A stretch of DNA of 64,000 bases from Heterodontus francisci (Eukaryota): the NCBI RefSeq assembly GCF_036365525.1, contig NC_090397.1:56398091-56462090 (forward strand), written 5' to 3'. The first letter of the stretch is position 1, and each line of letters begins with the position of its first letter. The notes beneath the pieces are model-generated. The model saw only the letters and a list, made by a program, of their open reading frames with translations, was not told where the DNA came from and made no database searches. Both the position numbers and the translations under genes were made by a program. Of this stretch, positions 28,185 through 64,000 are shown piece by piece.

Positions 28185-28528
28185 GGGCGGCACAGTGGTG
28201 CAGTGGTTAGCACCGCAGCCTCACAGCACCAGCGACCCAGGTTCAATTCTGGGTACTGCCTGTGCGGAGTTTGCAAGTTCTCCCTGTGACCGCGTGGGTT
28301 TTCGCCGGGTGCTCCGGTTTCCTCCCACAGCCAAAGACTTGCAGGTTGATAGGTAAATTGGCCATTGCAAATTGCCCCTAGTTTAGGTAGGTGGTAGGGG
28401 AATATAGGGAAGGTGGGGACATGGTAGGAATATGGGATTAGTGTAGGATTAGTATAAATGGGTGGTTGATGGTCGGCACAGATTCGGTGGGCCGAAGGGC
28501 CTGTTTCAGTGCTGTATCTCTAAATAAA
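28185..28528 (+). mobile_element. HE1-type SINE
   Basis: Same consensus. Confidence 0.88.
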
Positions 28529-38063: not shown

Positions 38064-39160
38064 ATGCCAATCAAGGTTGCAAAACTCAACAGATTGCTTT
38101 GACAAGATGTCACATGAGAGGTCCAAAAGCAGCACAAGAACATAAGGAATAGGAGCAGGGGTAGGCCATTCGGCTCCTCAAGCCTGTTCCACCATTCAAT
38201 ATGATCATGGCTGATCTGATTGTGGCCTTAACTCCACTTCCTGTCTGACCCCACATAACCCTTGACTCTCTTGTAGCTCACTTGCCAGAATTGTGAATAT
38301 CATCTATCCAAATGAGTAGAGCATAATAGATGACATTATGAGGGCAAGTGCTTCCTATATTGTGAGAGAAGTGAAAGCTTCACAATTGCTGTCTTTGCCC
38401 CAGAAGGCTCCTTGAAACGGGCCCTGTTGGTAGGTGATGCAGGAGTGGGGAAAAGTTGGGCTGTGACTAGCATCCAGCAAGAGTGGGCGGCGTCTCAACT
38501 AAGTCAATCAGGTGCAGCATTGTTTTCAGATTCTGCAATTTAAATGGGATTGAAGGAAAGACCAGTCTACGGAAACTGCTGAAGAAGCAGTGAGCCATTG
38601 TCGTCAGTCCTAACAGAACTTCTGTGTAACCCTCAGGATGTGTTGATCATTCTGGATGAACTGGATGAATTTAATCATCAGTTGAAGTGGGATCCACCAG
38701 ACAGTGATTTTAACATGGACACTGAGGCTGAAGTAAATGTTCTCGTTTCCAAAATAATTTCTAGGGATCTCCTTCCAGCAGGTATTGGTTACCTCCCGAT
38801 GGAATTCCAAGCAAATAGATTCTAACAAAAAGTATTTTGATTGCATCCTTATTAATTCTGGGTTTACCAATCATCAACTGAGCAGATATTGTGAAATGTT
38901 TCTTCAGGAAAAGGAAAGAGCAGCAGAAAATGAAACCATCACCTGCCTGGCTTCGAATCCCCTCAACAGTTACATCCTGTGCAATATTTTGGACAGATGT
39001 AGCTGCTGTCCTGCGGCGATATGGATATGCCAATGACGCACAGCAATACATTCTTGCTGTTCCTTTACAGCCTGTTTAACTGCAATACAAATTCATCTGA
39101 AGAGATGGTAGTCGCTATCGATAACTCAGACTGAACAGGAAGTCAAATTACTTAAAGACA
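38064..39160 (+). pseudogene. Truncated, frameshifted NLR NACHT exon copy (paralog of 62467-~63484)
   Basis: Colinear with the intact copy, including the upstream intron (37871 onward vs ~62268 onward). Walker A GDAGVGKS and LIILDELDE are retained. Has 2-, 5- and 7-nt deletions, a repeat insertion at ~38135-38275, and ends at a Harbinger-derived element. Confidence 0.92.
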
Positions 39161-40030
39161 CTGGCCAGAATTTTACGCCACCCCAACGAGCAGCATGGTG
39201 GCAGGGGGGGCGTAAAGGGTTGATGTTGCATTTCACTGCTGTGACAGTGCTGGGCACCATTTTAACACCACAGCATCAGCGTTTATCTCAGACTTGCCCA
39301 TCATGCGTACCATTTCAAGGCAGCAGCCAAGCATTGATCATGCAGGGCTTCCACATTGCATCATGAGTACACAAAAAACCTCCCTTGGCACATAAACGAT
39401 TAGAAGAATGAGGAATGCCCCTTACCCGGGCAGAGCGAAGCAGGTCATTGAGGCGCTTGCGGCACTGTATCTACGTATGCCTCACTACGCCTTGGCTGCT
39501 GACCTCCTCTGCAACCTCCAGCCAGGCCCTCTTGGTCACTTTGGAGGGTCTCCTTCTCCCATCTGAACTGAATAGAATGTCTCTCCTCTCAACTGCCTGC
39601 AGAAGGATCTGCAGTGAATCGTCAGAGAATCGGGCAGCAACGCAATTGCTTCTGCCCTCCATCACCTCTACCAGTCATATTGTTATCTCCCAGTCTTACT
39701 GTGTTTCAAGGTATGGAGCCTTTGAAATCTCCAGAACTTATGACACTTGTATCTGCCTTGACATCCAATGAAGAACTCACTGCTCTGTTTAACTTCAATA
39801 CTCCTTTATATAGGGCTTACAATCAGCCTTCCGCGTATGTGGCCCCGCCCCCAATGATGCTGAAGTTCCCGCCCGCGCGCGCCATTTCTTCTTGGAGTTA
39901 CGCCGCGGGCCCGCTGATTAGGTGATCAGCTCGTGATACCGGTGGCCAGGCGACGTGGAGCGGGATCGGGGGCCTGATCCGCTTCGAGCGCATCGGCCCC
40001 GGAGCCACAGGTAAGCGCAAAATTCTGGCC
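39161..40030 (-). mobile_element. Deleted Harbinger element retaining a Myb/SANT-like fragment
   Basis: TIR GGCCAGAATTTT / AAAATTCTGGCC; ORF 39471-39665 ARFSDDSLQILLQAVERRDILF...KRAWLEVAEEVS. Confidence 0.8.
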
Positions 40031-46840: not shown

Positions 46841-47011
46841 GGAGTGAACCTTTCGACTTAAGGCACCAGTGAAATTTGGCATTATGAAGCACCTATCATC
46901 TGCTCTTTATTATCAGTCACCTAGGATTCGCATTGCCAAAAATCTTGAAAAATGCTTGGAAATGAAATCTGGTAACTCATTCTATTTTCATGGGTTTTTA
47001 TTTTCCAGACA

Positions 47012-47072
47012 ATGGTAAATCCACTGTACAGCACACAGTTGTCACTTCTGTTTCTCCAGCAGTTTCTTTTAG
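47012..47072 (+). CDS. Exon: signal peptide (gene B)
   Basis: ttttccag|acaATG ... G|gtaagt; MVNPLYSTQLSLLFLQQFLL; phase 1 matches the V exon. Confidence 0.8.
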
Positions 47073-47274
47073 GTAAGTGCTTTGGCTTTATTGAGGAACT
47101 TTGTGTCAGTGTGTAATCCGCTGTCTGGTTGGTTGTCATAAGATATGCAGTTGACCTAAAGTCAATTATTTTTTTCTTTATTGGTTATTTATTGATTACT
47201 TCACAAATGTTCCTGCTGCCCAACAATATCATGAAGAATAATACTCTGTGGGCGTGTCTCCCTACTTACCCTGT

Positions 47275-47630
47275 GGGCGGCACAGTGGCGCAGTGGTTAG
47301 TACCGCAGTCTCACAGCTCCAGCGACCCTGGTTCAATTCTGGGTACTGCCTGCGTGGAGTTTGCAAGTTCTCCCTGTGTCTGCGTGGGTTTTCTCCGGGT
47401 GCTCTGGTTTCCTCCCACAAGCCAAAAGACTTGCAGGTTGGTAGGTAAATTGGCCATTATAAATTGTCCCTAGTATAGGTAGGTGGTAGGGAAATATAGG
47501 GACAGGTGGGGATGTGGTAGGAATATGAGATTAGTGTAGGATTAGTATAAATGGGTGGTTGATGGTCGGCACAGACTCGGTGTGCCGAAGGGCTTGATTC
47601 AGTGCTGTATCTCTAAACTAAACTAAACTA
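47275..47630 (+). mobile_element. HE1-type SINE
   Basis: Same consensus, (CTAAA)n tail. Confidence 0.88.
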
Positions 47631-48733
47631 CCCATTCTGTCCAGATTTATTCTTCTCTCCTGTTTTATTACTTAAGCTACTTTTACTTTATTTCTAACTA
47701 ATCAGCCTAATTCTAACATTACTTCATTTCTTTTGATTCATATGTTAAACATTATCTAATATAGACTGTGAATAGGAAGCAAGAGAAGATGGATATGAAA
47801 TCAGTGAGTCTGGAGAGAGGTTGAGGTCAGCAGAAATTCGTTTTGCACTGATTTATGAAATAGACGCCCAGAAAACCAGTTAATGCAATTTTTGATTCTT
47901 TCCTTCTAAAAGAACACAGGATAAATGCCTTTTGAACAATGGGGCTATAGGTTAAAAGGTTAAGCACAACTCTCGAAAGAACTTGCTTTTATATAGCACT
48001 GTATCACTTCTTTCCAGAAATCCTGAATGCTGAACATCCAGAGAGTTTTAAGGTGCAATCACTGTTCCTATGTGGACAAATGTGGCACCCAATTTCTGTA
48101 TAGCAAGATCCCACATACAGCACATGAGATGAATGACCAGTTAATGATGTTTTGTTGGTGTTGGTTAAAGGCAGAGAATTGCTCAAGACAGCAGGTGAAC
48201 TCCCTGTGTTCCTTCAGATTGTCTCTGGAAGCTTTTACATCCACTTGAATTGCCAAATCAAGTAGATAGGGCCTCAGTTTAATATCTGAATGACGGCATC
48301 TCTCTGTGATACACTAGAGTGTCAGCCTAGATTATGCACTCAAATCCTGAAATAGGATTTGTACCTGTGCATAGTGACCAAATACTCCACAACCCAAGTA
48401 CTGTTGGTACCGTGGTTGAGTAATTATGATGTTTCAGCTGGGTAGAGTTCAAAATGCAGATTGGGAGGTTGGATTAATGCTTTTCATTTTGACTTATTCC
48501 CTATAGTGGAGAGAGAGTTTTTACAGTTTTCTCTTGCAGATTGACCACCCTCAGGAGATAGAGTGGGTTGGGTGGAATCCATCACCCAACAGATTGCACA
48601 TGGAATGGACCAAATGACCATTTCTTGTTTCATGCTTCCTGTGGCTTCTGGAATCAATAAAAAAAAAGTGATTTTAGTGGCTTCACGCTTGTCTGTAAAA
48701 TAATGTATATTGTATGTCCTATATTTTTATTAG

Positions 48734-49081
48734 GTGATGGATCTCTCTCTCGGGCCTATGGAATTTTAGGTGAAGACACGATGCTGCCCTGCACCTTTCC
48801 TGCAGCAGCTATGTTCAATCTGCAGGATCTTGTCATCAACTGGCAACGGTCAGACAGTAGAACTGTGGTTCACAGCTTCTATAGTGAGGAAAACCATTCA
48901 AAGTATCAGGACCCAGCATTCAGGGGCCGGACTGAGCTGTTTCCGTGGGAATTCCCCAAAGGGAATGCTTCTCTTAAACTGAAAGGAGTGACTGTATCAG
49001 ATATGGGGAAGTATACCTGCTACGTGATTCAAGAGGACGGGAAGGGGTTCATTGAGAATGTGGTGGAACTGAAATTGCATG
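48734..49081 (+). CDS. Exon: B7/butyrophilin-family IgV domain (CD276/HHLA2/VTCN1-like) (gene B)
   Basis: tttttattag|GT ... G|gtgagc, phase 1-1; GILGEDTMLPCTF...LVINWQ...VVHSFY...YQDPAFRGRTELFPWEFPKGNASLKLKGVTVSDMGKYTCYV is the typical B7-family V signature. Confidence 0.93.
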
Positions 49082-49199
49082 GTGAGCACATGGACACCTC
49101 CCAACTGTCAATAAAAGGACATTTAGAGTTTTGTTCAGGGAATTGTGCTTGGGTCGGGAGTCAAAGACATCTGACATTTGTCCCCATAATCTAATTTAT

Positions 49200-49537
49200 G
49201 GGCGGCGCAGTGGTTAGCACCGCAGCCTCACAGCTCCAGCGACCTGGGTTCAATTCCGGGTACTGCTTGTGTGGAGTTTGCAAGTTCTCCCTGTGTCTGC
49301 GTGGGTTTCCTCCGGGTGCTCCGGTTTCCTCCCACAGCCAAAAGACTTGCAGGTTGATAGGTAAATTGGCCATTATAAATTGCCCCTAGTATAGGTAGGT
49401 GGTAGGGGAATATAGGGACAGGTGAGGTTGTGGTAGGAATACGGGATCAGTGTAGGATTAGTATAAATGGGTGGTTAATGGTCAGCACGGACTCGGTGGG
49501 CCGAAGGGCCTGTTTCAGTGCTGTATCTCTAAAATCT
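49200..49537 (+). mobile_element. HE1-type SINE
   Basis: Same consensus. Confidence 0.88.
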
Positions 49538-51799
49538 AAAAAAAAAATCTAGAAGGTGCTGCAAAGCTTTGATGTATTTTAAAGTGATCACACTTGGGCG
49601 AGATTCATGAGACTGGAGCTTGTTACATTGTGTAGTATAATTGGCTCATTCATATATGGAGCCACCTGTGTGCCATGCAGATGAAGTTCACTCCAGTCTG
49701 AGTAAAACATCAATTTAAAATAACCCTTTCCATTTGACTCGGGCCTCTCTTTTTCTAGTCTGAGAATAACATGAGTACCTTTAATCTGGTATTTAGGCTT
49801 TAAGTACTTTCCAACTTGACCTGAAGCTGCCCATATTTGCAGTTTATTAACAAGACTCCCAACGGACCCAGGGATGGGCCTGACACTATTGAATTCAAAA
49901 GCCCAGGTCTGCAGATCTGAGAGTCGTATAGCAAGGCTGTTAAATTCAAGATCTAGCTGCTGTCCAAATTAGCTTGGAAAAACCTCCACCTCTCATCCCT
50001 CTGCTGCCATCCTGGGAGGAAAAAAGCCTTGTTCCAGTCTCCAGGACATTGCTGCTTGCCACTCACCAATCAGAAGTGTAAGATGTGAGGACAACTTCTT
50101 TTGGAGATCCCTTCAAAGAGGGTGCCCCCCCCGATGCTGGTGGAGCAGGATGGGATGGGATTGCTGGTTACATGTTTGTCTACCTCATCACGTCCATAAG
50201 TACGAGAATCCAGCCCATCTCGGAAAACCCTGGCAATCCCAAGCAAAGTAATGTGGGTGAAGACTCAGCATTGCAAACTCCTCACCCCTTTTAGCCCTTC
50301 TTTGTACATGGGAACTGAGTTTACGAGAGGAAAATCAGACCCCATACTTGCCTTCCTAACTATCTGACATTTATGTTCTTGTTAGTTGCTCAGTGAAGCT
50401 GGTGGCCGGGGGTTGATCAACAATTTCTTGGTAATTCAATGCCCATCCTACCATTGCTGCCAGTCTCTGTAGCCTTTCCTTGAGAGTGTCCAGAGGTGAG
50501 CAACAAAGGCGATTCAAGGGATCAGGCATTTACAGGGAAAAAATTAAGGATCTCAGATTAGATTTGATTGGAAAGAGGAGACTTTAAGGCAACTGTTTCA
50601 ATTTGAAGTCTTGTAAAGACAGGCATGTATAGATTATTAAATGGAATAAGCTAGTTGGTATAATATAGAATTATAAAATATTACACCAGAATAACTGTTT
50701 TAGTTGTTGGATTCAAACACGTCAGACAAATGCAGATGTACTAGGCAGGCTCTCCAGCACAGCAGGAGTGAGTGTGAGAATGAAATGTCAGCTGCTGAAT
50801 GGACTTCAATGTAGAAAGAGAAAAAGTTCCTATGACAATAAATATCTGAAGAGATAAAGGCTTAAAGCGAAAGAGAATTATTATAAGTACATGCATGGTG
50901 AACATCCAGAGTGTGATAAACCCAAAATACATTAATTGACTGGTAAACTGAATGATGGCAACTGATTTCACAGTTAAATAAGCTGATGTATTAATTGACA
51001 GGAATGGTGTATTGGACCCAGCGGTTATCCTTATAAATATCGGTGACTGTTGTACTTGAGTGTTATTTCGAAGAGCAGGGGAGTTATCCCTGTGTCCTCG
51101 CCAATATCTGTCCCTCAAACAAACACAAAAAACCCAGATCATCTAGTGATTATCACATTGCTGTTTGTGGGAGCTGACTGTGTGCAAATTGGCTGCCACG
51201 TTCCCTATGTTCCAATAGTGACCACCCTTTGGGACGTCCTGCAGTAGTGAAAGGTGCTAAATAAATGCAAGTCTTTTTTGAGTAACTCTGCCTAATCTAT
51301 TCTGGGACTACTTGGAATCTGAACTGGATATCCTTCCATTTGCATAAGTCCCTAGATGCCCTTTTTCACTTTGCAACAGCTGACTGCGAGAACACTTAGT
51401 AAGATGAAGCTGGGTTTATATCATTCAGCTGGTTTATTTCACAGCAAGTGAATGCAGATCAACATTTATGATCAGATTCACGTAATTCAATGAGTACAAC
51501 TTATTTTTGCATTTTTATGCAAAGACAATGAGTATGTTATGCTTTCCAACATCAGTGGGTAGTCTTTATTGATTTAAACAAGACAATTAGTAATTACCCT
51601 CCTACGTTCTAACCTTCTAACTGTGGTAAATGCGTGCCTTGGCAATCTAGTTTTTTTTAAAAAATCATCAATGTGTCTTTCCCAATATGTATTATCCACA
51701 GGTGAGGGCAGGGCCTGTTGTGGACAAGCCCTGCAGAGCATGTCTGACCATGGACTTCCCAACACACTGGATGTGGCTGTTTATCAAATGTAGATAGTC

Positions 51800-53422
51800 T
51801 GGGTCATGTAGTTATCAAAAAGGAGGAGGTGTTGGGCGTCTTGCAAAGCATTAAGGTAGATAAGTCCCCAGGGCCTGATGGGATCTACCCCAGAATACTG
51901 AGGCAGGCAAGGGAAGAAATTGCTCGGGCCTTGACAGAAATCTTTGTATCCTCATTGGCTACAGGTGAGGTCCCAGAGGATTGGAGAATAGCCAATGTTG
52001 TTCCTTTGTTTAAGAAGGGTAGCAAGGATAATCCAGGAAATTATAGGCCGATGAGCCTTACATCAGTGGTAGGGAAATTATTGGAGAGGATTCTTCGGGA
52101 CAGGATTTACTCCCATTTGGACACAAATTAACTTATTAGCGAGAGGCAGCATTGTTTTGTGAAGGGGAGGTCGTGTCTCACTAACTTGATTGAGTTTTTT
52201 GAGGAAGTGACGAAGATGATTATGAAGGAAGGGCAATGGATGTTGTCTATATGGACTTCAATAACGCCTTTGACAAGGTCCCTCATGGCAGACTGGTACA
52301 AAAGGTGAAGTCACACGGGATCAGAGGTGAGCCGGTAAGATGGATACAGAACTGGCTCGGTCATAGAAGACAGAGGGTAGCAGTGGAAGGGTGCTTTTCT
52401 GAATGGAGGGATGTGACTAGTGGTGTTCCGCAGGGATCAGTGCCGGGACCTTTGCTATTTGTAGTATATATAAATGATTTGGAGGAAAATGTAGCTGGTC
52501 TGATTAGTTATTTTGCGGACGACACAAAGGTTGGTGGAGTTGCGGATAGTGATGAGGATTGTCAGAGGATACAGCAGGATATAGATTGGTTGGAGACTTG
52601 GGCGGAGAAATGGCAGATGGAGTTTAATCCGGACAAATGTGAGGTAATGCATTTTGGAAGGTCTAATAACGGTGGGAAGCATACAGTAAATGGCAGAACC
52701 CTTAGGAGTATTGACGGGCAGAGAGATCTGGGCGTCCATTCCACAGGTCACTGAAAGTGGCAACGCAGGTGGATAAGGTAGTCAAGAAGGCATACGGCAT
52801 GCTTGCCTTGATTGGTCGGGGCATAGAGTATAAAAATTGGCAAGTCATGTTGCAGCTGTACAGAACTTTAGTTAGGCCATACTTAGAATATTGTGTGCAA
52901 TTCTGGTCGCCACACTACCAGAAGCACGTGGAGGCTTTGGAGAGGGTAAAGAAGAGGTTTACCAGGATGTTGCCTGGTCTGGAGGGCGTTAGCTATGAGG
53001 AGAGGTTGGATAAACTCAGATTGTTTTCACTGGAACGACGGAGCTGGAGGGGCGACATGATAGAGGTTTACAAAGTTATGAGTGGCATGGACAGAGTGGA
53101 TAGTCAGAAACTTTTTCCCAGGGTGAAAGAGTCAGTTACTAGGGAACATAGGTTTAAGGCGCGAGGGGCACAGTTTAGAGGGGATGTGCGAGGCAAGTTC
53201 TTTACACAGAGGGTGGTGAGTGCCTGGAACTTGCTGCCGGGAGAGGTGGTGGTAGCAGGTATGATAGCGACGTTTAAGAGGCATCATGACAAATACATGA
53301 ATAGGATGGAAATAGAGGGATACGGTCCCCGGAAGTGCAGAAGGTTTTAGTTTAGACAGGCATCAAGAACGGTGCAGGCTTGGAGGGCCGAATGGCCTGT
53401 TCCTGTGCTATACTGTTCTTTG
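51800..53422 (+). mobile_element. 5'-truncated CR1-clade LINE (HER1-like) RT
   Basis: KSPGPDGIYP, PGNYRP, DFNNAFDKVPH, GVPQGS, FADDTK, LEYCVQFWSP; frameshifted; 3' tail GGCCTGTTCCTGTGCT. Confidence 0.93.
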
Positions 53423-53714
53423 TACTGAGACAGGCAATTGAATTGTTTGTTTTAAATCATGGAGAAACAACTGAACTATCTAGCACTTTAGCATTTAACC
53501 ATGTACCTCTGGTTTTTTAACCTTGTCTGAACACATGTTGCTTTAAAATCGCAACATTTCAATTCAGTATACAGTTTTGATCCTATTTTCGATAAATGCA
53601 ATTTATGGATCTTTGATTAATATCACTTGATTCAGTATACAGATCTTAAACTGGCATCTGGTACTTTTTACCAATCCTGTACCCGAATACTAACTAAAGT
53701 GGTGGGAAAAATTA

Positions 53715-54387
53715 TGGCGGTTATTTTGGCCAGAAGGTGAAAACCAGAGCTAAATGGGTGATGTGCTTCTCAGACACACCAGTTTGAAAATCTGGATTTA
53801 GCATATAGTTTTGGTCCTAATTGCTGATTACCATCATTTAGCTGGCCTGGAGGTGCTAAACCAGACATCTGTAGGTTTAGCACTGAAGTGCTGCGAAGAC
53901 GCAATTTTTGTGGAGCGGTGTAGGTGGGCTCCTCGCACCCACTCCACTGAAGGTGTGGCATGCACTAGCTAGCACACATAAGCATGTTGCTAGAGTGTTG
54001 GTGGAGTCTTGACAGTGTTCAAAAAAGTCTTGCAATGTGTTTCAGAGGTCCTCTTCACACCAACTGAACAAGAAATTGTGAATATCCCTTTACTTGCATT
54101 TGAAATCCACATCAATGTCTTTATTACTCCCAATTATCTGCTTGCTGTCAAGAGGGCATTAGAACAAGCGCTAACCATCAAGATGCCATAAAGCTTCCTT
54201 AATGAACGCTAGCAGGCATTTTAAGTGGCAATCAACCCCTTACTTAGCAAGCTTCCAGTGGCCGTTCCTGTTATTCACTTCCACCCCTTTAACAAGATGA
54301 CGTCTTGCTCTAAATCAGCATTTCAGCTCAAGACCTCACCGCGCTCAGAGGATAGTTAGCACCTGAACACACTGCCAAAAATCGCCC
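53715..54387. mobile_element. MITE-like repeat; related copy at ~43930-44835 is split by a CR1 insertion
   Basis: Imperfect TIRs GGCGGTTATTTTGGCCAG / CTGCCAAAAATCGCCC; shared blocks GCAGGCATTTT.AGTGGCA.TCAACCCCTT and GCATTTCAGCTCA. Confidence 0.55.
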
Positions 54388-54476
54388 ATTTTATAGGAAA
54401 TTTAGTGATCAATTCTCATCTCAGTTCTCAATGGAACGCTTTAACCATTTGGTCATTTTTATTCTAAATATCCTAG

Positions 54477-54638
54477 ATAAACTACTGGTTACTGGAACTG
54501 ATGTCCAAAATCAACCTTCAGAAAGAGAAAAGCAAAGAAATAGACTGATACCTTTCACTGTAGCTATGGTTGTTACAATTGGACTTGTAGTTGCATTTTG
54601 GAAAATGAGAAACGTGAAGCAACAAGATTCTGACGAGA
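54477..54638 (+). CDS. Exon: stalk + transmembrane + juxtamembrane (gene B)
   Basis: tcctag|AT ... A|gtgagt, 162 nt, phase 1-1; DKLLVTGTDVQNQPSEREKQRNRLIPFTVAMVVTIGLVVAFWKMRNVKQQDSDE. Confidence 0.82.
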
Positions 54639-55598
54639 GTGAGTAAAATGTTTAGAAATATTAGGCACTCCGATCTGTATAAATATAAATACGAATTTAG
54701 TACTTGGAAAGAATCTTTTATAACAATTGAATTACAAAATTCAGTATAAATATTCTTGAATATGTATGGGTTATAGGTTTTTTTTACATGGCTGTGAACT
54801 TATTACTTTTTATCCCACTTCTGTACTGGCTAAGCCTTAAAAATGATGTTGGTGTTTGCCACAAGACTGACAGCTTTATGGATATAAAATTGAGAATGTT
54901 ATAGGTGCAAGATGTGTAATATGATTGAGTCCTATAGATATATGATTTGTGATACGATTGTTAACTTATACTAAGGAAACCATGTTTAGTGTTGGATGAC
55001 TTAGTTACATTTATACTACAAACATAGTTTCATAGTGAAGTGATTTTTCTCCACATCAACATTAATAAGTTATAAGGGTAGATTTTCCAAATTCCCACTC
55101 CAAGCATGCAACCTCTTCACTGGGACTGCACATTTAAAAAAAATCTCCTCCTTAGTGTAAATTGAGAGTCAGGGGTTGACTTGACTGAGGATCAAGAGCT
55201 CCTTCTCCGGCGAAAGCTTCACCGTGGGCTCGAGTCAGCTCCTAACTCCAGTATTACACAACATCATAGTATCATTGAGAAGTGGAGCTACTTGACACCA
55301 GTGCTAAGATTCTAGTGTGAATGGAGTCTGAAACTGTGCTTCTGACTCACTGAGCAGCAAACCATTACACAATAAGGATCACAGAACACTGCTCCACACA
55401 TGCCTAGTCACTATAATCTCAGGTTGTGACTTGTGGAGAATCTTGTCAGATTTGTTGCCATTTAATCTCATCAAATGTTCTGTGCAGTATTAAATTTTAG
55501 ATATAGTATGTTGATGATTTCTACAGATTCCAGCTGCAGTAAGAGAAACCACTTGTTAAGAATCAGACACTAACTCGAACTTATTCTATATTTTTCAG

Positions 55599-55628
55599 AA
55601 ACACCTTTGCTAGGAGACGCTTTAGAAG
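55599..55628 (+). CDS. Short cytoplasmic linker exon (gene B)
   Basis: ctatatttttcag|AA ... G|gtattg, 30 nt, phase 1-1; KTPLLGDALE; no stop codon. Confidence 0.6.
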
Positions 55629-56223
55629 GTATTGACCTGAGTTCTGTTTTGTGTTCTTATTGGACTGTAGGATATGTAATGCAGCTGCATTAGCTACAGT
55701 AATAGACATGGCCTCTCTTAATTATTTTAATCCATCTGTACAAATAACCTCACCTAATCGTCAGAGACCTGTGATGACATATTTGCTTTTGTAATTTAGC
55801 TAGGCAAAGAATAGAAGTTTAATCATTAAGGAATTTGAAACATGGACACCATATGCCAAAGGAGATATAAAATAGAGACACATAAGTCAGGTTTAAGCTG
55901 TGAAAAATGATAAGATATTGAAAGACAATTTAGCTTATCAGGCTAACACCTTTCAGAAAATATGTACAGCCTAATAGGTATCTGCAGTTCAGTGTCCTCC
56001 AAGAGCTACCAGATAAGGCCACATTGATGGGGAGAATAGGAAGGGAGGTACCCCTTTAATACTTTGATACCATGTTGATGTCCCTTCCCACATTGCACAT
56101 TGATGAGGAGTCTGACTTGGTTTTCATCAGATGCTCCCATTAGATCTTCCAAAAAAATCTTTGGAATGCTGCACGAACTTTTCCTGTTAAAAACAGCAAC
56201 TTCAACAACGTATATTTATATAG

Positions 56224-56445
56224 AATAAAAACAAGAAATGCTGGAACCACTCAGCAGGTCTGGCAGCATCTGTGAAAAGAGAAGCAGAGTAAACGTTTCG
56301 GGTCATTGGTTCCGATGAAGGGTCACTGACCCGAAACGTTTACTCTGCTTCTCTTTTCACAGATGCTGCCAGACCTGCTGAGTGGTTCCAGCATTTCTTG
56401 TTTTTATTTCAGATTTCCAGCATCCGCAGTATTTTGCTTTTATTT
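56224..56445. repeat. Short palindromic Penelope-terminus repeat
   Basis: Near-perfect ~80-bp inverted arms (56224-56305, 56327-56408). Confidence 0.82.
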
Positions 56446-56449
56446 TAGT

Positions 56450-57100
56450 ATATTTATATAGCACCTTTAATGTAGTAAAACATCCCAATGTGCTTTGCAG
56501 GAGCATTATAAGACAAAGTATAGCTCTGAGCCACAAAAGGAGATATTGGGTCAGATGACCAAAGGTTTGGTCAAAGAGGTAGGATTTAAGGAGTGTCTTA
56601 AAGAAGGGAAGCAAGGTGGAGAGGTGCAGAGAGATTGGGGCCTAGGCAACTAAAGGCACAGCTACCAATGATGGAGTGATTAAATTCAGGGATGCACAAG
56701 AGGCCAGAGTTAGAGGAGCACAAGTATCTTGGAAGGTTGTGGGGCTGGAGGAGATTACAGAGGTCGGGAGTGGCAAGGTCATGGAGGGATTTGAAAACAA
56801 AGAGGAGAATTTTAAAATCAAGACATTGCTTGACGATGAGCCAGTGTAGGTCAGCAAGCACAGGGGTGATAGGGGAAAAGGACTTGGTGCGAGTTAAGAC
56901 ACGGGCAGCAGAGTTTTGGATGACCTCATGTTTACGGAGAGTAGTATGTGGGAGACCAGCCAGGAGGGCATTGGAATAGTCAAAGCTAGAGGTTACGAAG
57001 GCACAATTGAGGATTTCAGCAGCATATGGGCTAAGACGGGGTGAAGTCAGGTGATGTTATAGAAGTGGAAAAAGACAGTCTTGTGATGGCACGAATATGA
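56450..57100 (-). mobile_element. L2-like LINE 3' fragment
   Basis: LADLHWLIVKQCLDFKILLFVFKSLH and FKTLLKSYLF fragments. Confidence 0.78.
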
Positions 57101-57166
57101 GATCGTGTTCTGTTTAAATGCTGCTACAATTATTTCAGCATCAAGCACTAATTTAATTGAAGCACG

Positions 57167-59605
57167 AACAAGAAATGCTGGAAATACTCAGCAGGTCTGG
57201 CAGCATCTTTGGAGAGAGAAGCAGAGTTAACGTTTCAGGTCAGTGACCCTTCATCAGAACTGGCAGATATCGGAAATGTAAAAGGTTTTAAGCAAGTAAA
57301 GCGGGGGTGGGGCAAGAGATAACAAAAGAGGTGTTGATAGGACAAAGTCACAGAGAATAACCGACCAGAAGGTCATGGAGCAAAGGCAAACGGTAGTTAA
57401 TGGTGTTCTGAAAGACAAAGCATTAGTACAGAGAGGGTGTTAATGGACAGAGAAGTGAACAGCCTGGACCCAAGCACAAACATGAAAAAACAGTGGGTAG
57501 GCACAGTAGAAACAAACTAAAATAAAATAAACACATAAAAAAGAGAAAATAATTAAAAAGAAAAAGAGGGGCCCATCATGCTCTGAAATTATTGAACTCA
57601 ATGTTCAGTCCGGCAGGCAGTAGCGTGCCTAATCGGTAAATGAGATGCTGTCCCTCGAGCTTGCGTTGATGTTCACTGGAACACTGCAGCAAACCCAGGA
57701 CAGAGATGTGAGCATGAGAGCAGGGGGGGGGGGGGGGGGGAAGTGTTGAAATGGCCAGCAACCGGAAGATCAGGGTCATGCTTTTGGACTGAGCGGAGGT
57801 GTTCTGCAAAGCGGTCACCCAGTTTGCATTTGGTCTCCCCAATGTAGAGGAGACCACATTGTGAGCAGCGAATACTGTATACTAAATTGAAAGAAGTACA
57901 AGTAAATCGCTGCTTCACCTGAAAGGAATGTTTGGGGCCTTGGATATTGAGGAGAGAGGAGGTAAAGGGCAGGTATTATACCTCCTGTGATTGCAGGGGA
58001 AGGTGCCATGGGAAGGGGATGAGATTGTGGGGGTAATGGAGGAGTGGACCAGGGTGCAGCGGAGGGAACGGTCCCTTCGGAATGCTGACAGGGGAAGGGA
58101 GGGGAAGATGCATTTGGTAGTGGCAACACGCTGGAGGTGGCGAAAATGGCAGAGCATGATCCTTTGGATGTGGAGGCTGATGGGGTGGAAAGTGAGGGCA
58201 AGGGGAACCCTGTCGTGGTTCTGGGAGGGAGGGGAAGGGGTGAGGGTAGAGGTGCGGGAAATGGGCCAGACACGGTTGAGGGCCCTGAGAACCATAGTGG
58301 GGGAGATTCCTCGATTGAGGAAAAAGGAAGACATATCAGAAGCGCTGTTATGGAAGGTAGCATCATCAGAGCAGATGTGTCAGAGGCGGAGAAACTGGGA
58401 GAATGGAATGGAGTCCTTACAGGAGGCAGAGTGTTAAGAAGTGTAGTCGAGGTAGCTGTGGGAGTCGTTGGGTTTGTAATGAATATTAGTAGACAGCTTA
58501 TCCCCAGAGATGGAGACAGAGAAATCGAGGAAGGGAAGGGAAGGTTCCCCTTGTCCTCACATTCCACCCCACCAGCCTCCACATCCAAAGGATCATCCTC
58601 TGCCATTTCCGCCACCTCCAGCATGATGCCACTACCAAATGCATCTTTCCCTCCCTTCCCCTGTCAGCATTCTGAAGGGCGACACCCTGGTCCACTCCTC
58701 CATTACCCCCACCACCTCGTCCCCTTTCCACGGCACCTTCTCATGCAATCGCACGAGGAGTAATACCTCCCCATTTACCTCCTCTCTCCTCATTATCCAA
58801 GGCCCCAAACATTCCTTGCAGGTGAAGCAACAATTTACTTGTACATCTTTCAATGTCATATACTGTATTCGCTGCTCACAATGTGGTGGTCTCTTCATTG
58901 GTGAAATCAAACGCAGACTGGGTGACCGCTTTGCAGAACACCTCCGCTCAATCTGAAAGCATGGCCCCGATCTTCCGGTTGCTGGCCATTTCAACACTTC
59001 CCCCCCCCCACCCTGCTCTCATGCTCACATTTCTGGCCTGGGATTGCTGTAGTTTTCCAGTGAACATCAATGCAAGCTCGAGGAACAGCATCTCATTTAC
59101 CGATTAGGCACGCTACAACCTGCCGGACTGAACATTGAGTTCACTAATTTCAGAGCATGACGGGCTCCCCTTTTTCTTTTGAGATATGTTTTCTTTTTTA
59201 TGTGTTTATTTTATTTTAGTTTGTTTCTACTGTGCCTACCCACTGTTTTCATGTTTGTGCTTGGGGCCAGGCTGCTCTGTTTTCTGTCAATTAACAACCT
59301 CTCTGTACTAATGCTTTGTCTTTCACCACACCATTAACATACTGTTTGCCATTGCTCCATGACCACCTGATAGGACAAAGTCACAGTGAATAACCTATCA
59401 ACACCTCTTTTGTTATCTCTTGCCCCACCCCCGCTTTACTTGCTTAAAACCTTTTACATTTCCGATATCTGCCAGTTCTGATAAAATGTCACTGACCTGA
59501 AACGCTAACACTGCTTCTTTCTCCACAGATGCTGCCAGACCGGCTGGGTATTTCCAGCATTTCTTGTTTGTCAGATGTCCAGCATCTGCAGTATTTTGCT
59601 TTTAC
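57167..59605. mobile_element. Penelope-like element in inverted configuration (~1 kb arms)
   Basis: 57167-~58210 is the reverse complement of ~58543-59570; both arms encode FTCTSFN..Y.IRCSQCG.L.IGE.K..LGDRFAEHLRS (GIY-YIG). Confidence 0.88.
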
Positions 59606-59624
59606 TAATTTATTTTAATTTTTA

Positions 59625-60820
59625 GCTAATGTAACAGAGAAGGTCGATGAAGGGAATGTGGTGGATTTTGTTCATATTGATTTTAAGAAAGTGTTTTATC
59701 AGGTACCGCAGAAAAGGCTGGTTAACAAAATTGAGGCTCATGGAATAGGAGGGTCAGTGTCCAAATGGATTTTTAAAAAATTGGCTTAAGGAACAACGAG
59801 TCGTAATAAATGGTTGTTTTTCAGACTGGAGGATGATAGGCAGTGGTGTTCCCCAAGGGTCAGTGCCAGGACCACTTTTTTTTTGCTTGGATCTTTGAAT
59901 ACAGAGTAGCATCTCAAAATTTGCTGATGACACCAAAATTGGAGCTGTGAGAAACAGTGAGGATGGTATGAACTGCCTGCAACAGGACATATATAGGCTT
60001 GCAGAATGGGCAGACAGGTGGCAGATGGAATTTAATACTGACAGGTGTGAGGTGATGCATTTTGGCAGAAGGAATAGGGAGAGACAATATATACTTAGTG
60101 GCACAGTTCTGAAGAGTGTGCAGGAACAGAAGGACCTGGAGGTGCAAGAGCGTCGATCTTTGAAGGTGGCAGGACAGATTGAGAGAATGGTTAGTAAAGC
60201 ATGTGGGATCTTGGGTTTCATAAATGGAAACATTGAGTACAAAAGCGGGGAAGTTATGCTGAACTTTTATTGAGCTCTGGTTCGGCCCCATCTGGAGTAT
60301 TGCATCCAGTTCTGGTTACCACACTTTAGGAAGGAAGTGAGGGTCCTTGAGAGGGTGCAGAGGAGATTTACCAGAATGGTTCCAGGGATGGAGGATTTTA
60401 GTTACAAGGTTAAGTTGGAAAAGCTGGGTTTGTTCTCCTTAGAACAAAGGAGATTGAGGGGAGTTTTAATAGACGTATACAAAATTCTGACAGGCTTAGA
60501 TAAATTAGACAAGGAAAAGCTGTTCCCATTAACTCATGATACAAGGACTAGGGGACACAGATTGAAGGTTTTGGGCAAGAGATGTAGGAAGAAATTTTTA
60601 CGTAGCAGGTGGTAATGACCTCGAACTCACTGCCCACAAGAGTGGTGGAAGTGGAGACAATCGATGCTATCAAAATAAAATTGGTTGGCTACTTGAAGGA
60701 AATTGCAAGGCTACAGGGGTCAAGAGGGGGAGTGGAACTGACTGAATAGCTCCATGGGGAGCTGGCATGGGCTCGATGGGCCATATGGCCTCCTTCGGTG
60801 CCGTAAATGACTCTATGACA
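59625..60820 (+). mobile_element. Decayed CR1 LINE fragment
   Basis: GVPQGS, FADDTK, WQMEFN, LERVQRRFTRM fragments and 3' tail. Confidence 0.88.
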
Positions 60821-61067
60821 CTTATCTGTCCAGCATCTTCCATGTGTGTCACATAGATATAAATTGGGACTCAAGCAGTGAACCAAATCTAATGACCCTT
60901 TCTTACAACTTCCATTTGACAGCCTGGCTATGAACCCGTGATGGTCCTTCCATGTTGATTTGCAAGGTATTAATGACAGTCAGCACTGTGTGCCCAAATA
61001 GTCCATGCAGTGCAAAAGGGAGTAATCCATCAACTAGAGGTCATTTATTTGTTTTATTTTATTTTAT

Positions 61068-61372
61068 TTAGAGATACAGCACTGAAACAGGCCCTTCGGC
61101 CCACCGAGTCTGTGCCGATCAACAACCACCCATTTATACTAACCCTGCAGTAATCCCATATTCCCTACCACCTACCTACACTAAGGACAATTTACCATGG
61201 CCAATTTACCTATCACCTGCAAGTCTTTTGGCTTGTGGGAGGAAACCAGAGCACCCGGCGAAAACCCACGCAGACACAGGGAGAACTTGCAAACTCCGCA
61301 CAGGCAGTACCCAGAATCGAACCCGGGTCCATGGAGCTGTGAGGCTGCAGTGCTAACCACTGCGCCACTGTG
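61068..61372 (-). mobile_element. HE1-type SINE
   Basis: Reverse complement of the same consensus. Confidence 0.88.
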
Positions 61373-62466
61373 AAATCACCTCAATGTAGGAATATCTCAG
61401 ATAGCTGCACTCCAGTTCAGCTGCAGTTTTGTGATGGGAACCTGGCCACATAATTCCAACCAATTGTGTTCAGTGCCTACAAGGACTTTGGGTTCAACCA
61501 GAAGAGTTAGTGAACCCTTGAGTTTTGTGATTAATTATCCATACCTCCTTTGACATGTGGCTGGAAATGCTTTTTCATTTCATGCTGAGATCTCTTCGAT
61601 CTATCTTTTTCTGGATATTAATGTTCCATCCATTCGCCCATGTCTTTAAGTTTGAGGTTGGAATGCAGATACTAAATGAACCTGAGTCTTGTACTTTGTC
61701 TAAAACGTAACCGCTGAAACACATATTCTGAAGTATCCAAATTCTAAACAGAGACTTAAAAAGTTGATTTTTACTATGAGGCAGTTTCATTAATGACCGC
61801 ATCCTGCGCCAAGCTCAAGGATATTTATGGTTCCCAGTTGCCCCAATGCATACACACTCCAAGCAGCCTCACTCCAATTAAGGCTTCCTGCGCATCTTTG
61901 TTTCTCATTGTCTATCCATTGGTGGCTGTGCCTGCAGCTACCTAGGCCCCAAGTTCTGGAATTCCCTCCCTAAACTTCTCTCTCTCTCTCCCCTTTAAGA
62001 TGCTGCTTAAAACCAAAGTATTTGATCAAGCTGTCACCTGTTCTAGTATCTCTTTAATATGGCTTGGTGTCAAATTTTATTTGGTAATACTTCTGTGAAG
62101 CACCTTGGGGCATTTTACTGCATCAAAGGCACTATATAAATGTAAGATGTTGTTGCACATATACACTCATCAGGAGTTCCAAGTTTATCTTTCCGATGCA
62201 TCAAATTTTGTGAAATATTTTCATAATTACATCCAATATTCTAAGCTGTGTAATGAATTGCATACCATATATTAAATACAGAGAATGAACGTATAAATAC
62301 TGTAATGTTTTGGAATTTAAATGTAGAAAGAGTTGGGTATTTTTAAAAGCTGGATATGTAACTAACTGCCTGGTGCCCGTTTTCAATTCCTGCTTTTCCT
62401 GTGTTTTGTTAATCCACTGTAATAAAACACATACTCATATCAATAAATTCAACTATTCCCTTCCAG

Positions 62467-64000
62467 ATGCCATTCAAGGTTACAAAGAGTACATTTTGCA
62501 AATCTCAACAGCTTGCTTTGACAAGATGTCACATGGGATGTCCAAATACTGCAGCTCACTTACCAGAACCGTGCATGTCATCTATCCAAAGGAGCAGATC
62601 TCACCGGAGGACATTATGAGGGCAAGTGCTTCGGATATTGAGAGAGAAGTGAAAGCTTCACAATTGTTGTCTTTGCCCCAGAAGGAAAAGTGCTCCTTGA
62701 AACGGGCCCTGCTGGTAGGTGATACAGGAGTGGGGAAAAGCTGGGCTGTGACTAGCATCCAGCAAGAGTGGGCAGCGTCTCAATTAAGTCAGCCACTCAG
62801 ATGCATCATTGTTTTCAGATTCTACAACTTAAATGAGGTTGAAGGAAAGACCAGTCTACGGAAACTGCTGAAGAAGCAGTGTGAGCCATTGTCATCAGTC
62901 CTAACAGAACTTCTGTGTAACCCTCAGGATGTGTTGATCATTTTGGATGGACTGGATGAATTTAATCATCAGTTGAAGTGGGATCCACCAGATGGTGATT
63001 TTAACATGGACACTGAGGCGGAAGTAAATGTTCTCGTTTCCAAAATAATTTCTAGGGATCTCCTTCCAGTAGCACAGGTATTGGTTACCTCCCGATGGAA
63101 CTCCAAGCAAATAGAAGCTAACGAGAAGTATTTTGATTGCATCTTTATTATCTCTGGGTTTACCAATGTTCAGTTGAGAAGATATTGTGAAATGTTCCAT
63201 CAGGTAAAAGAAAGAACATCAGAAATGTATCAGTACTTTACAGAAAATGAAACCATTACCTGCCTGGCTTCAAATCCCCTCAACAGTTACATCCTGTGCA
63301 ATATTTTGGGCAGATGTAGCTGCTGTCCTGCAGTGATGATGAATATGCCAGTGACGCACAGCAAAATGTTTTCACTGTTCCTTTACAGCCTGCTTAACTG
63401 CAATACAAATTCATCTGAAGAGATTATGGTCACTATCAATAACTCTGAGACTGAACAGGAAGAGAAATTGTTAAAAGACACTGTCCTGAAATTGGGGGAA
63501 CTGTCCTTCAATAATTTGCTGTCAGGGAAACTTGAAATAAATGAAGATGATCTGGGTGCCTATGAAATAGACTCAGGAGTTCTTTCAAAGTATTTCTCCA
63601 ATCTTATCCTTGAAAAGAAGTGTAAAGGTCAATGTATCTTTGAATTCTACCATGTTGTGCTGAAGGACCAGTTTGCAGCTTTGTATTGTGCAACTTCACT
63701 GAAAGATGATGCTGAAGAGTTGGTCAAATGTCTGGATCTTTGGTGTTTTGGGAAAATGCCAAACAATCAAAAAAGCCAATATTATCTGAGATCATTTCAG
63801 CCTGAACACACAGAGAAACTGTACAATTTCATAAGGCTTCTTATGGGCTCCTTAACAACAGCAAGAGACAGCAAGTTGTGGAACTGTAGTGTTCCTCTCA
63901 CGCATTCTACAGCCAGAGCTCTTGTGAGATGGTTCAAAAATTGTCTCAAACGAGATATTAAGAAGTCAGAGTTGCTGAATTTAATGCATTGTCTTTCTGA
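62467..64000 (+). CDS. Large NLR-type NACHT (NTPase + helical/winged-helix) exon, open to the window edge; possibly the cytoplasmic part of gene B
   Basis: Acceptor cccttccag|AT, phase 1; I read it as open to position 64000 (no stop, hence absent from the ORF track). DAIQGYKEYILQ, Walker A GDTGVGKS, Walker B LIILDGLDE, LVTSR, SGF, NPL, FEFYHVVLKDQFAALY, LLNLMHCL. Confidence 0.93.

What the first reader, a model, noticed from the sequence alone, without database searches (positions are those of the whole stretch)
47012..64000. Candidate transmembrane NLR: signal peptide - B7-type IgV - TM - NACHT in one gene
Seen: leader, B7-like V, TM and 30-nt linker exons all end in phase 1 without a stop. 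The next coding exon I can find on that strand is an intact phase-1 NACHT exon. Joining them gives ...VAFWKMRNVKQQDSDE-K-TPLLGDALE-D-AIQGYKEYILQ...GDTGVGKS, in frame even if the linker exon is skipped. The 6.8 kb between is mostly TEs, and I see no CARD/PYD/death-fold exon, promoter or clear terminal exon. Established: characterised vertebrate NLRs are intracellular with N-terminal effector domains; butyrophilins couple B7-like ectodomains to a cytosolic B30.2 sensor. Inference: a butyrophilin-like design using a NACHT switch, where cytosolic sensing clusters a surface B7 domain or ectodomain ligation drives NACHT oligomerisation. I know of no characterised example, but cannot check databases.
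Basis: partly seen in the sequence, partly recalled or inferred. Interest (0 to 1): 0.93.

Follow-up and report, generated by a model that had tools for sequence, protein, structure and literature searches.

The report
Membrane-spanning NLR with B7-like ectodomain
This shark locus is one real gene that puts a B7-type immunoglobulin domain outside the membrane and an NLR innate-immune switch (NACHT plus leucine-rich repeats) inside; the design is conserved from sharks to amphibians, sits in databases under misleading names, and I found no paper describing it in vertebrates.

Summary
The five exons (47009-47072, 48734-49081, 54477-54638, 55599-55628, 62467 to the window end) translate exactly to residues 2-713 of this genome's own public protein model (P0242, 990 aa), including the four split codons.

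The same order, signal peptide, B7-like IgV, one TM helix, NACHT, LRR and a helical C-cap, is annotated in about 17 cartilaginous fishes, in gar and in many amphibians; coelacanth has in-clade but incomplete models. Transcript-sized contigs from a skate (3.3 kb for 982 aa) and a salamander encode it whole. The NACHT domains of these proteins form one strongly supported clade, so the fusion predates the shark/bony-vertebrate split.

The 30-nt "linker" exon is not a spacer. Together with the preceding codon it encodes a conserved acidic dileucine sorting motif, present in 25 of 27 members.

The ectodomain is among the most conserved parts. There is no CARD, PYD or TIR domain. Function is inferred: a membrane-tethered NACHT switch that travels the endocytic route.

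The closest characterised analogue is the sea cucumber AjNLRC4. No vertebrate description was found. Novelty: a new variant of a known kind.

The parts
47009..47072 (+). Signal-peptide exon (TMVNPLYSTQLSLLFLQQFLL, then a split G). It holds the in-frame ATG at 47012. The annotated Met1 comes from an upstream exon that was not located.
   Evidence: Translation equals P0242 residues 2-22. Acceptor TTTTCCAG, donor GTAAGT.
48734..49081 (+). B7-H3/B7-H4-like IgV exon (the whole ectodomain; there is no IgC exon).
   Evidence: Pfam V-set 4.3e-12. PDB sequence matches CD276 1.9e-31 and VTCN1 7e-19. Model residues 26-139 match B7-H3 at Z 18.1, rmsd 1.4, and B7-H4 at Z 17.9. Equals P0242 residues 24-138.
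54477..54638 (+). Stalk, single transmembrane helix (LIPFTVAMVVTIGLVVAFW) and polybasic/acidic juxtamembrane stretch (KMRNVKQQDSDE).
   Evidence: It is the only hydrophobic 19-mer above threshold in the 990-aa protein. The model shows a helix at 162-186. Equals P0242 residues 140-192.
55599..55628 (+). 30-nt exon that completes a conserved acidic dileucine motif (E-K-T-P-L-L).
   Evidence: [DE]xxxL[LIV] lies 9-19 residues after the TM helix in 25 of 27 family members, and gar has EGVPLI. Equals P0242 residues 194-202.
62467..64000 (+). First 1534 nt of the large exon: FISNA-like helix, NACHT NTPase (Walker A GDTGVGKS, Walker B LIILDGLDE), winged helix and HD2. It runs on beyond the window.
   Evidence: Pfam NACHT 2.8e-23, NOD2_WH and NLRC4_HD2. 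PDB sequence matches NLRP6/9/5/3. Fold matches NOD2 at Z 28.5 and NLRP3 at Z 27.4, starting at NLRP3 residue 131. Equals P0242 residues 204-713.
51829..53350 (+). LINE reverse-transcriptase remnant inside the V-to-TM intron (not coding for the gene).
   Evidence: RVT_1 7.4e-23 for 52236-52751.
57676..57918 (-). GIY-YIG endonuclease remnant (Penelope-type retroelement) inside the 6.8-kb intron.
   Evidence: Pfam GIY-YIG 1.8e-4, just under the curated cut-off. Mirror-image ORFs on both strands between 57.6 and 59.1 kb.

Best explanation
The region holds the 5' two thirds of one gene for a type I transmembrane NLR.

Shown:
- The mature protein (990 aa in this genome's public model) reads: signal peptide; a single B7-H3/H4-like IgV domain; a short stalk; one TM helix; a polybasic stretch plus an acidic dileucine motif; a FISNA-like helix; a NACHT NTPase with intact Walker A/B; winged helix; HD2; about six ribonuclease-inhibitor-type LRRs; and a three-helix C-terminal cap.
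- It belongs to an old jawed-vertebrate family: one copy per cartilaginous fish, with several paralogues in amphibians.

Inferred:
- The IgV domain faces the outside or the lumen of endocytic vesicles. The NACHT-LRR module sits on the cytosolic face, permanently tethered to the membrane.
- The dileucine signal makes the protein cycle through the endocytic or endolysosomal route.
- The single TM helix mechanically couples clustering of the conserved ectodomain (by a conserved partner) with ATP-driven NACHT oligomerisation.
- There is no death-fold or TIR domain, so output must go through partners of the NACHT/LRR/C-cap.

The direction of signalling is unresolved. I lean slightly to outside-in, an endocytic receptor (about 0.4). 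Inside-out, butyrophilin-like, gets about 0.3. Mere membrane addressing of an NLRC3/NLRX1-like regulator gets about 0.3.
For: Gene structure:
- Exon translations and split codons equal P0242 residues 2-713.
- P0174 and P0242 are this genome's own models.
- V-set plus NACHT models exist in 13 further cartilaginous fish species with P0001 as query. Cluster look-ups add Amblyraja, Leucoraja and Rhincodon.
- Logan contigs of 3341 bp (982 aa, skate) and 3.3-4.4 kb (995-1008 aa, salamander) leave no room for introns.
- All aligned models but one join the small exon to the NACHT exon at the same column.

Family:
- All 28 IgV-TM rows fall in one 40-row clade, FastTree support 100.
- In IQ-TREE that clade is one side of a branch with SH-aLRT 100.

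Topology and fold:
- One TM segment.
- AF2 model with pLDDT 76.9 and a confident IgV, NACHT, LRR and C-cap.
- Fold matches to NOD2, NLRP3, the NLRX1 C-terminal fragment, B7-H3 and B7-H4.

Constraint:
- The V-domain cysteines, W59, the GNAS sequon and Walker A/B are invariant.
- Shark-versus-bony-vertebrate identity: IgV 39.9%, LRR 44.8%, NBD 35.2%, stalk and TM 10-17%.

Sorting motif: present in 25 of 27 members.
Against:
- The Scyliorhinus canicula RefSeq model differs around the small exon, with a 30-aa read-through insert. So some models are partly ab initio.
- Public gene models are not independent of each other when made by one pipeline.
- Topology, glycosylation, sorting, ATPase activity and every partner are predictions.
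- No effector domain is visible, so the output is unknown.
- The dileucine motif is short, and its function here is inferred from general knowledge of [DE]xxxL[LI] signals.
Confidence: 0.8

Rival explanations
1. Inside-out, butyrophilin-like signalling. The cytosolic NACHT-LRR senses a ligand or a danger signal and oligomerises. This reorders or clusters the B7-like V domain at the cell surface, which is then read by a conserved counter-receptor on lymphocytes. This is the same gene, with the opposite direction of signalling.
For: - The V domain is closest to B7-H3, B7-H4, ICOS-L, PD-L1 and butyrophilins, which act as ligands for lymphocyte receptors.
- The ectodomain is as conserved as the ATPase core across about 450 My, which fits a conserved endogenous partner.
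- Butyrophilins pair such an ectodomain with a cytosolic sensor domain (established knowledge).
Against: - There is no IgC domain and only a short stalk.
- A conserved endocytic dileucine motif points to internalisation rather than stable surface display.
- No counter-receptor is known.
Confidence: 0.3
2. Address-tag model. The IgV-TM-dileucine module only delivers and anchors a regulatory NLR (NLRC3/NLRX1-like, with no effector domain) at endolysosomal or phagosomal membranes. There the NACHT-LRR meets ligands or signalling complexes, and the ectodomain does not itself signal.
For: - No CARD, PYD or TIR domain.
- The LRR plus three-helix cap resembles the NLRX1 C-terminal fragment (3un9, Z 22.7; Atlas lead).
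- A polybasic stretch and dileucine motif are present.
- Other NLRs need membranes through lipidation or PI4P binding (established knowledge).
Against: A mere anchor would not need an IgV domain kept at 40% identity between sharks and amphibians, with an invariant disulfide and glycosylation sequon. The stalk and TM, which only anchor, drift freely (10-17%).
Confidence: 0.3
3. Two separate genes, a small B7-like IgV-TM gene and a neighbouring NLR, wrongly merged by the reader and by annotation pipelines.
For: - Phase-1 compatibility is expected by chance between Ig and NLR exons.
- A 6.8-kb transposon-rich intron separates them.
- There is no read-level RNA evidence at this locus.
- One RefSeq model has an odd junction.
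Against: - The same order is seen in more than 25 species, including independent annotation projects.
- Intron-free contigs encode the whole protein.
- The juxtamembrane motif and the start of the NACHT exon are conserved as one contiguous stretch.
- The NACHT domains form one clade.
- No other 5' exon is used in this genome's models.
Confidence: 0.03
4. The locus is a decaying copy, transcribed or not, and no longer makes a working protein.
For: - A frame-shifted copy of the NACHT exon lies 24 kb upstream, so duplication and decay do occur here.
- The introns are full of transposons.
Against: - All five exons are open with canonical splice sites.
- The full model is 990 aa with invariant catalytic and structural residues.
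- The row sits on a short branch (0.13) among orthologues.
Confidence: 0.03

Closest known systems
AjNLRC4 of the sea cucumber Apostichopus japonicus (PMC8699970; also AjNLR-new, PMC13133943)
   Same: A membrane NLR with extracellular Ig domain(s), a transmembrane segment and an intracellular NACHT domain. It is experimentally a cell-surface receptor that is internalised after ligand binding.
   Different: As reported, AjNLRC4 has two Ig-type domains, two TM segments and no LRR. It binds microbes directly and acts through actin. The shark protein has one B7-type IgV, one TM helix, LRRs and a C-terminal helical cap. Common ancestry was not tested because I held no sequence; convergence is more likely.
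Butyrophilins (BTN3A1/BTN2A1) and the B7 family (B7-H3/CD276, B7-H4/VTCN1)
   Same: The V domain is of this type: CD276 1.9e-31, and B7-H3 Z 18.1 / B7-H4 Z 17.9. It is a type I membrane protein. As in butyrophilins, a B7-like ectodomain is tied to a cytosolic sensor-type domain.
   Different: There is no IgC domain and no B30.2. The cytosolic part is a complete NACHT-LRR module of about 800 residues.
Cytosolic vertebrate NLRs (NOD2, NLRP3, NLRP6, NLRC3, NLRX1)
   Same: The NACHT-WH-HD2-LRR core has the same fold: NOD2 Z 28.5 and NLRP3 Z 27.4, aligned from the start of NLRP3's FISNA region. The LRR plus three-helix cap resembles the NLRX1 C-terminal fragment, Z 22.7. Walker A/B are intact.
   Different: There is no CARD, PYD or BIR domain. 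The N-terminus is a secreted IgV plus a TM helix, so membrane attachment is built in rather than achieved by lipidation or lipid binding. In the trees the family is not orthologous to any named mammalian NLR.
Other annotated vertebrate Ig-TM-NACHT models
   Same: An Ig ectodomain, one TM segment, then a NACHT domain.
   Different: They carry V plus C ectodomains (butyrophilin-type IgC, or C1-set). Their NACHT domains fall outside this family's clade, so they look like independent fusions. They are gene models only and were not checked further.

Membership tests
NLR (NACHT-LRR) family | NACHT NTPase domain with Walker A and Walker B | tested here: met
   Pfam NACHT 2.8e-23. GDTGVGKS and LIILDGLDE are present. 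G290, G292, K293, S294 and D363 are invariant in 24 members.
NLR (NACHT-LRR) family | Winged-helix and HD2 modules after the NBD, with an overall NLR fold | tested here: met
   NOD2_WH and NLRC4_HD2. Foldseek match to NOD2 at 5.8e-32. VIA matches to NOD2 at Z 28.5 and NLRP3 at Z 27.4.
NLR (NACHT-LRR) family | C-terminal leucine-rich repeats | tested here: met
   LRR_6 1.2e-9 in P0242, residues about 723-888, which lie outside the window. The model shows repeated strand-helix units.
NLR (NACHT-LRR) family | N-terminal effector domain (CARD, PYD, BIR) and a soluble cytosolic protein | tested here: not met
   No such Pfam match at E up to 1. The N-terminus is signal peptide, IgV and TM.
B7 / butyrophilin family | B7-type IgV domain | tested here: met
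   CD276 1.9e-31, VTCN1 7e-19 and BTN3A1 5.5e-12. B7-H3 Z 18.1 at rmsd 1.4 and 34% identity.
B7 / butyrophilin family | Membrane-proximal IgC domain | tested here: not met
   There is no C-set match, and only about 22 residues lie between the V domain and the TM helix, in every member.
B7 / butyrophilin family | Short tail (B7) or B30.2 domain (butyrophilin) in the cytosol | tested here: not met
   The cytosolic part is NACHT-LRR.
Echinoderm membrane NLR (AjNLRC4 type) | Extracellular Ig, TM, intracellular NACHT | tested here: met
   Predicted architecture, compared with the description in PMC8699970.
Echinoderm membrane NLR (AjNLRC4 type) | Two TM segments, no LRR | tested here: not met
   One TM segment. 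LRRs are present.
Echinoderm membrane NLR (AjNLRC4 type) | Common descent with AjNLRC4 | not tested
   No AjNLRC4 sequence was available through the tools.
Jawed-vertebrate IgV-TM-NLR clade (unnamed; auto-annotated 'NLRC3-like', 'NLRP1 homolog' and so on) | NACHT domain inside the clade | tested here: met
   Within the 17-row cartilaginous-fish subclade (100) and the 40-row clade (100). In IQ-TREE the clade is one side of a branch with SH-aLRT 100.
Jawed-vertebrate IgV-TM-NLR clade (unnamed; auto-annotated 'NLRC3-like', 'NLRP1 homolog' and so on) | Same domain order, with the conserved juxtamembrane [DE]xxxL[LIV] motif | tested here: met
   Alignment A1. Motif EKTPLL in the window; present in 25 of 27 members.

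The most novel reading that the evidence does not exclude
Jawed vertebrates ancestrally had a surface or endosomal NLR in which a B7-type ectodomain is wired through one TM helix to a NACHT oligomerisation switch. It would be a functional bridge between B7/butyrophilin co-signalling molecules and NLR innate sensors. It is retained in cartilaginous fishes, gar, coelacanth and amphibians, and was not seen in teleosts or amniotes among the hits whose organism I could name (11 in-clade or near-clade rows stayed unnamed). Ig-TM-NACHT fusions arose at least three times in vertebrates. If the protein truly signals across the membrane, it would be the first transmembrane NLR of vertebrates.
Probability: 0.55. 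Interest if true: 0.85.

Novelty: new variant of a known kind. Interest (0 to 1): 0.74.

Why it matters
Textbooks treat vertebrate NLRs as soluble cytosolic sensors with death-fold effector domains, and treat B7/butyrophilin molecules as a separate world of surface co-signalling ligands. Here one conserved gene joins the two. It has stayed under purifying selection, ectodomain included, since before sharks and bony vertebrates split.

That makes several open questions directly testable in skate, gar, newt or frog:
- Can a NACHT switch be driven from, or report to, the outside of the cell?
- What does a B7-H3/H4-like V domain bind in basal vertebrates? The receptors of B7-H3 and B7-H4 are still disputed in mammals.
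- Why was this design apparently lost in teleosts and amniotes?

It also shows that automatic names such as 'NLRC3-like' and 'NLRP1 homolog' hide a distinct family.

Tried and rejected
No letters of 59186-59221 were sent to any search tool afterwards; I worked beside them.
The Logan contigs of P0172 and P0181 could therefore not be read; only their lengths are known.
- The PMSF mixture tree on 122 rows did not finish in two 300-s calls. I used FastTree on 122 rows and IQ-TREE LG+G4 on 63 rows instead.
- A profile search with alignment A2, meant to name the N-terminally truncated in-clade proteins (P0005-8, P0010, P0017, P0026, P0030, P0054, P0065), returned mostly teleost NLRs and did not name them.
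- The Atlas feature search of the C-terminal tail gave no usable hit. Its structure list only gave the NLRX1 lead.
- The elephant-shark transcript-derived entry V9KLB9 (P0246) covers only the C-terminal half, so it says nothing about the fusion.
- Literature searches for a vertebrate Ig-TM-NLR found nothing. Searches failed on term length.
- I did not build or search a joined spliced model. Exons were searched one by one by reference, and whole-protein work used the public proteins P0242 and P0174.
- Rejected: two merged genes, and a pseudogene (see rivals). Also rejected: the idea that the 30-nt exon is a mere spacer.

Full report
**The observation**

- Leader exon ending at 47072, with an in-frame ATG at 47012.
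- IgV exon at 48734-49081.
- Stalk/TM exon at 54477-54638.
- A 30-nt exon at 55599-55628.
- A long open exon from 62467 to the end of the window.

All of them end in phase 1. Pfam gives V-set (4.3e-12) for the second exon. For the last exon it gives NACHT (2.8e-23), NOD2_WH and NLRC4_HD2.

By sequence the V domain is closest to B7-H3 (CD276, 1.9e-31) and B7-H4 (7e-19), then to butyrophilins, MOG, ICOS-L and PD-L1. The NACHT exon is closest to NLRP6, NLRP9, NLRP5 and NLRP3.

The introns carry transposon remains: RVT_1 at 52236-52751 and a GIY-YIG piece at 57676-57918 on the minus strand.

Phase compatibility alone would not prove a join, so I looked for independent evidence.

**One gene or two**

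An exhaustive HMMER search with the NACHT exon against 1.84 billion representative proteins gave, as best hit, a 993-aa catshark protein (P0001, 69% identity). In it the NACHT part starts at residue 233. Pfam shows V-set plus NACHT plus LRR in that protein, and also in more distant hits of about 30% identity. Their sources are RefSeq or GenBank models from Scyliorhinus, Discoglossus, Pleurodeles, Hyperolius, Rhinatrema, Ambystoma and Lepisosteus.

A second search, with P0001 as query, found the same architecture in 13 further cartilaginous fishes: sharks, rays and the chimaera Callorhinchus. It also found it in newts. Cluster look-ups added Amblyraja, Leucoraja, Rhincodon, Latimeria (whose models are incomplete) and several frogs.

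Two hits carry no source name, which marks them as this genome's own proteins: P0174 (810 aa) and P0242 (990 aa). Translating the window exons one by one gives exactly P0242 residues 2-22, 24-138, 140-192, 194-202 and 204-713. Its Met1 is supplied by a further upstream exon ending in ATG, which I did not locate. A three-base coding contribution of that kind, and the existence of two isoforms, suggest transcript support, but that is inference.

Direct transcript evidence comes from relatives.
- P0172 (982 aa, the same length as the Leucoraja protein) is encoded on a Logan contig of only 3341 bp.
- Five salamander-type proteins of 995-1008 aa are on Logan contigs of 3.3-4.4 kb.

In this window the first 713 codons alone span 17 kb, so those contigs must be spliced mRNA.

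I could not obtain read-level evidence at this locus. I did not build or search a joined spliced model; exons were searched by reference and the public proteins served for whole-protein work.

**A family, and an old one**

I aligned the NACHT-to-HD2 region of 122 proteins. All 28 rows with IgV and TM fall into one clade of 40 rows with support 100. The other 12 rows in it either lack the N-terminus (for example they start at Walker A) or keep only the TM helix. In an IQ-TREE run on 63 rows, the clade is one side of a branch with SH-aLRT 100.

Inside it, the 17 cartilaginous-fish rows form a subclade that follows the species tree: chimaera, then sharks and rays, with one row per species among those sampled (Amblyraja has models on two contigs). 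Amphibians have several paralogues. The fusion therefore predates the split of cartilaginous and bony vertebrates.

Among the hits whose organism I could name I saw no teleost or amniote member. The nearest such proteins are CARD-bearing or NLRC3-type and lack the V domain. That is absence among named hits, not proof of loss.

**Anatomy**

An alignment of 24 full-length members, a hydropathy scan and an AlphaFold2 model built on that alignment (mean pLDDT 76.9) give the following layout.
- A signal peptide.
- An IgV domain at 25-139, with invariant cysteines, W59 and a GNAS glycosylation sequon.
- A disordered stalk.
- One TM helix at 162-186.
- A polybasic stretch.
- A helix starting at about residue 198, where the small exon ends and the big exon begins.
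- NBD, winged helix and HD2.
- About six LRRs.
- A confident three-helix cap at 903-988.

Fold comparison:

| Solved structure | Z | Model range |
|---|---|---|
| NOD2 | 28.5 | 195-939 |
| NLRP3 | 27.4 | 203-899 |
| NLRX1 C-terminal fragment | 22.7 | 717-971 |
| B7-H3 | 18.1 (rmsd 1.4) | 26-139 |
| B7-H4 | 17.9 | 26-139 |

In the NLRP3 match, model residue 203 aligns to NLRP3 residue 131, the start of its FISNA region.

No CARD, PYD, BIR or TIR domain is found, even at E up to 1.

**The small exon**

With the last codon of the TM exon it spells E-K-T-P-L-L. A [DE]xxxL[LIV] motif lies 9-19 residues after the TM helix in 25 of 27 members: sharks, rays, chimaera, frogs, salamanders and a caecilian. 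Gar has EGVPLI. This is the classical acidic dileucine signal read by AP adaptor complexes (established knowledge), so I infer endocytic or endolysosomal sorting. Skipping the exon keeps the frame and would delete the signal.

**Constraint**

Mean identity between cartilaginous fishes and bony vertebrates, by region:

| Region | Identity |
|---|---|
| LRR | 44.8% |
| IgV | 39.9% |
| NBD | 35.2% |
| HD2 | 30.7% |
| C-terminal tail | 29.8% |
| Stalk and TM | 10-17% |

The ectodomain is thus at least as constrained as the ATPase core. That fits a conserved binding partner better than a mere anchor or a fast-evolving pathogen binder.

**How it most likely works**

Shown: one gene, its domain order, the intact catalytic motifs and the family's age.

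Inferred:
- Type I topology with the V domain outside or in the lumen and the NACHT-LRR on the cytosolic face.
- Trafficking through the dileucine motif.
- Coupling of ectodomain clustering and NACHT oligomerisation through the single helix.

The direction of signalling is open. I give outside-in (endocytic receptor, as in the sea cucumber protein) about 0.4. Inside-out (butyrophilin-like) gets about 0.3. A membrane-addressed regulatory NLR gets about 0.3. The output is unknown because no effector domain is present; the C-terminal cap is the obvious candidate surface.

**Comparison with what is known**

The literature library held no description of a vertebrate Ig-TM-NLR. It is incomplete for subscription journals. 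The whale shark genome paper reports an expanded NLRP-related family but no such architecture.

Characterised precedents exist in an echinoderm. AjNLRC4 has extracellular Ig domains, two TM segments, an intracellular NACHT domain and no LRR, and it mediates Vibrio phagocytosis (PMC8699970). AjNLR-new is described with the opposite topology (PMC13133943).

The shark protein works like these in outline, but it fails two of their structural features, and common descent was not tested. It meets the core NLR criteria but not the N-terminal effector criterion. It meets the B7 V-domain criterion but has no IgC or B30.2 domain.

**Verdict**

The protein is already in public databases under misleading automatic names, and a functional analogue is known in an invertebrate. 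I therefore rate it a new variant of a known kind rather than categorically new. As a conserved, apparently undescribed vertebrate family it is of real interest (0.74).

Noticed in passing
window 38077-39173 (+): A decayed partial copy of the NACHT exon lies 24 kb upstream in the same orientation. It has 86.8% nucleotide identity to exon positions 84-1027, with 42 gap positions, at least two frameshifts, several stops and an insertion of about 145 bp. It ends abruptly at 39173.
   Followed up: partly
window 2271-2591 (+): Another open V-set exon (Pfam V-set 3.3e-14) with only generic TCR/NAR-type matches in the PDB. It has a 'VPPP' stretch before the G strand. It belongs to a different upstream gene that I did not identify.
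   Followed up: partly
P0118 and P0092 (Polypterus senegalus); P0072 (Narcine bancroftii): Other annotated Ig-TM-NACHT models. The bichir proteins have a butyrophilin-type IgV plus IgC, one TM and a NACHT domain. The electric ray protein has V-set plus C1-set, one TM, NACHT and LRR. Their NACHT domains lie outside the family described here, so these look like independent fusions.
   Followed up: partly
P0001 (Scyliorhinus canicula XP_038668161.1), residues about 196-232: This RefSeq model reads through the donor of the small exon and starts the NACHT exon early, which adds 30 residues that no other member has. The equivalent read-through in the window meets the TAG at 55691. It is probably a modelling artefact or a minor isoform.
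   Followed up: partly
P0004 (Rhinatrema isoform X2), P0011 (Ambystoma), P0030: Some models keep the TM helix and NACHT-LRR but replace the leader and V domain with a short alternative N-terminus. This hints at isoforms without an ectodomain.
   Followed up: no
window 47262-47448, 49198-49389, 61181-61373, also 25200-25487 and 28150-28289: Repeated SINE-like element: ORFs on both strands read '...AVVSTAASQLQRPGFNSGYCLCGVCKFSLCLRGF...'. Copies are scattered through the introns and upstream sequence in both orientations.
   Followed up: no
window 14081-14917 (+): Tandem repeat giving long repetitive ORFs (units such as 'EQLTTGTGEHAVPQTMEMFS') in two frames; probably a minisatellite.
   Followed up: no
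Nothing is implied about them, and they were not sent to any search tool afterwards.
   Followed up: no
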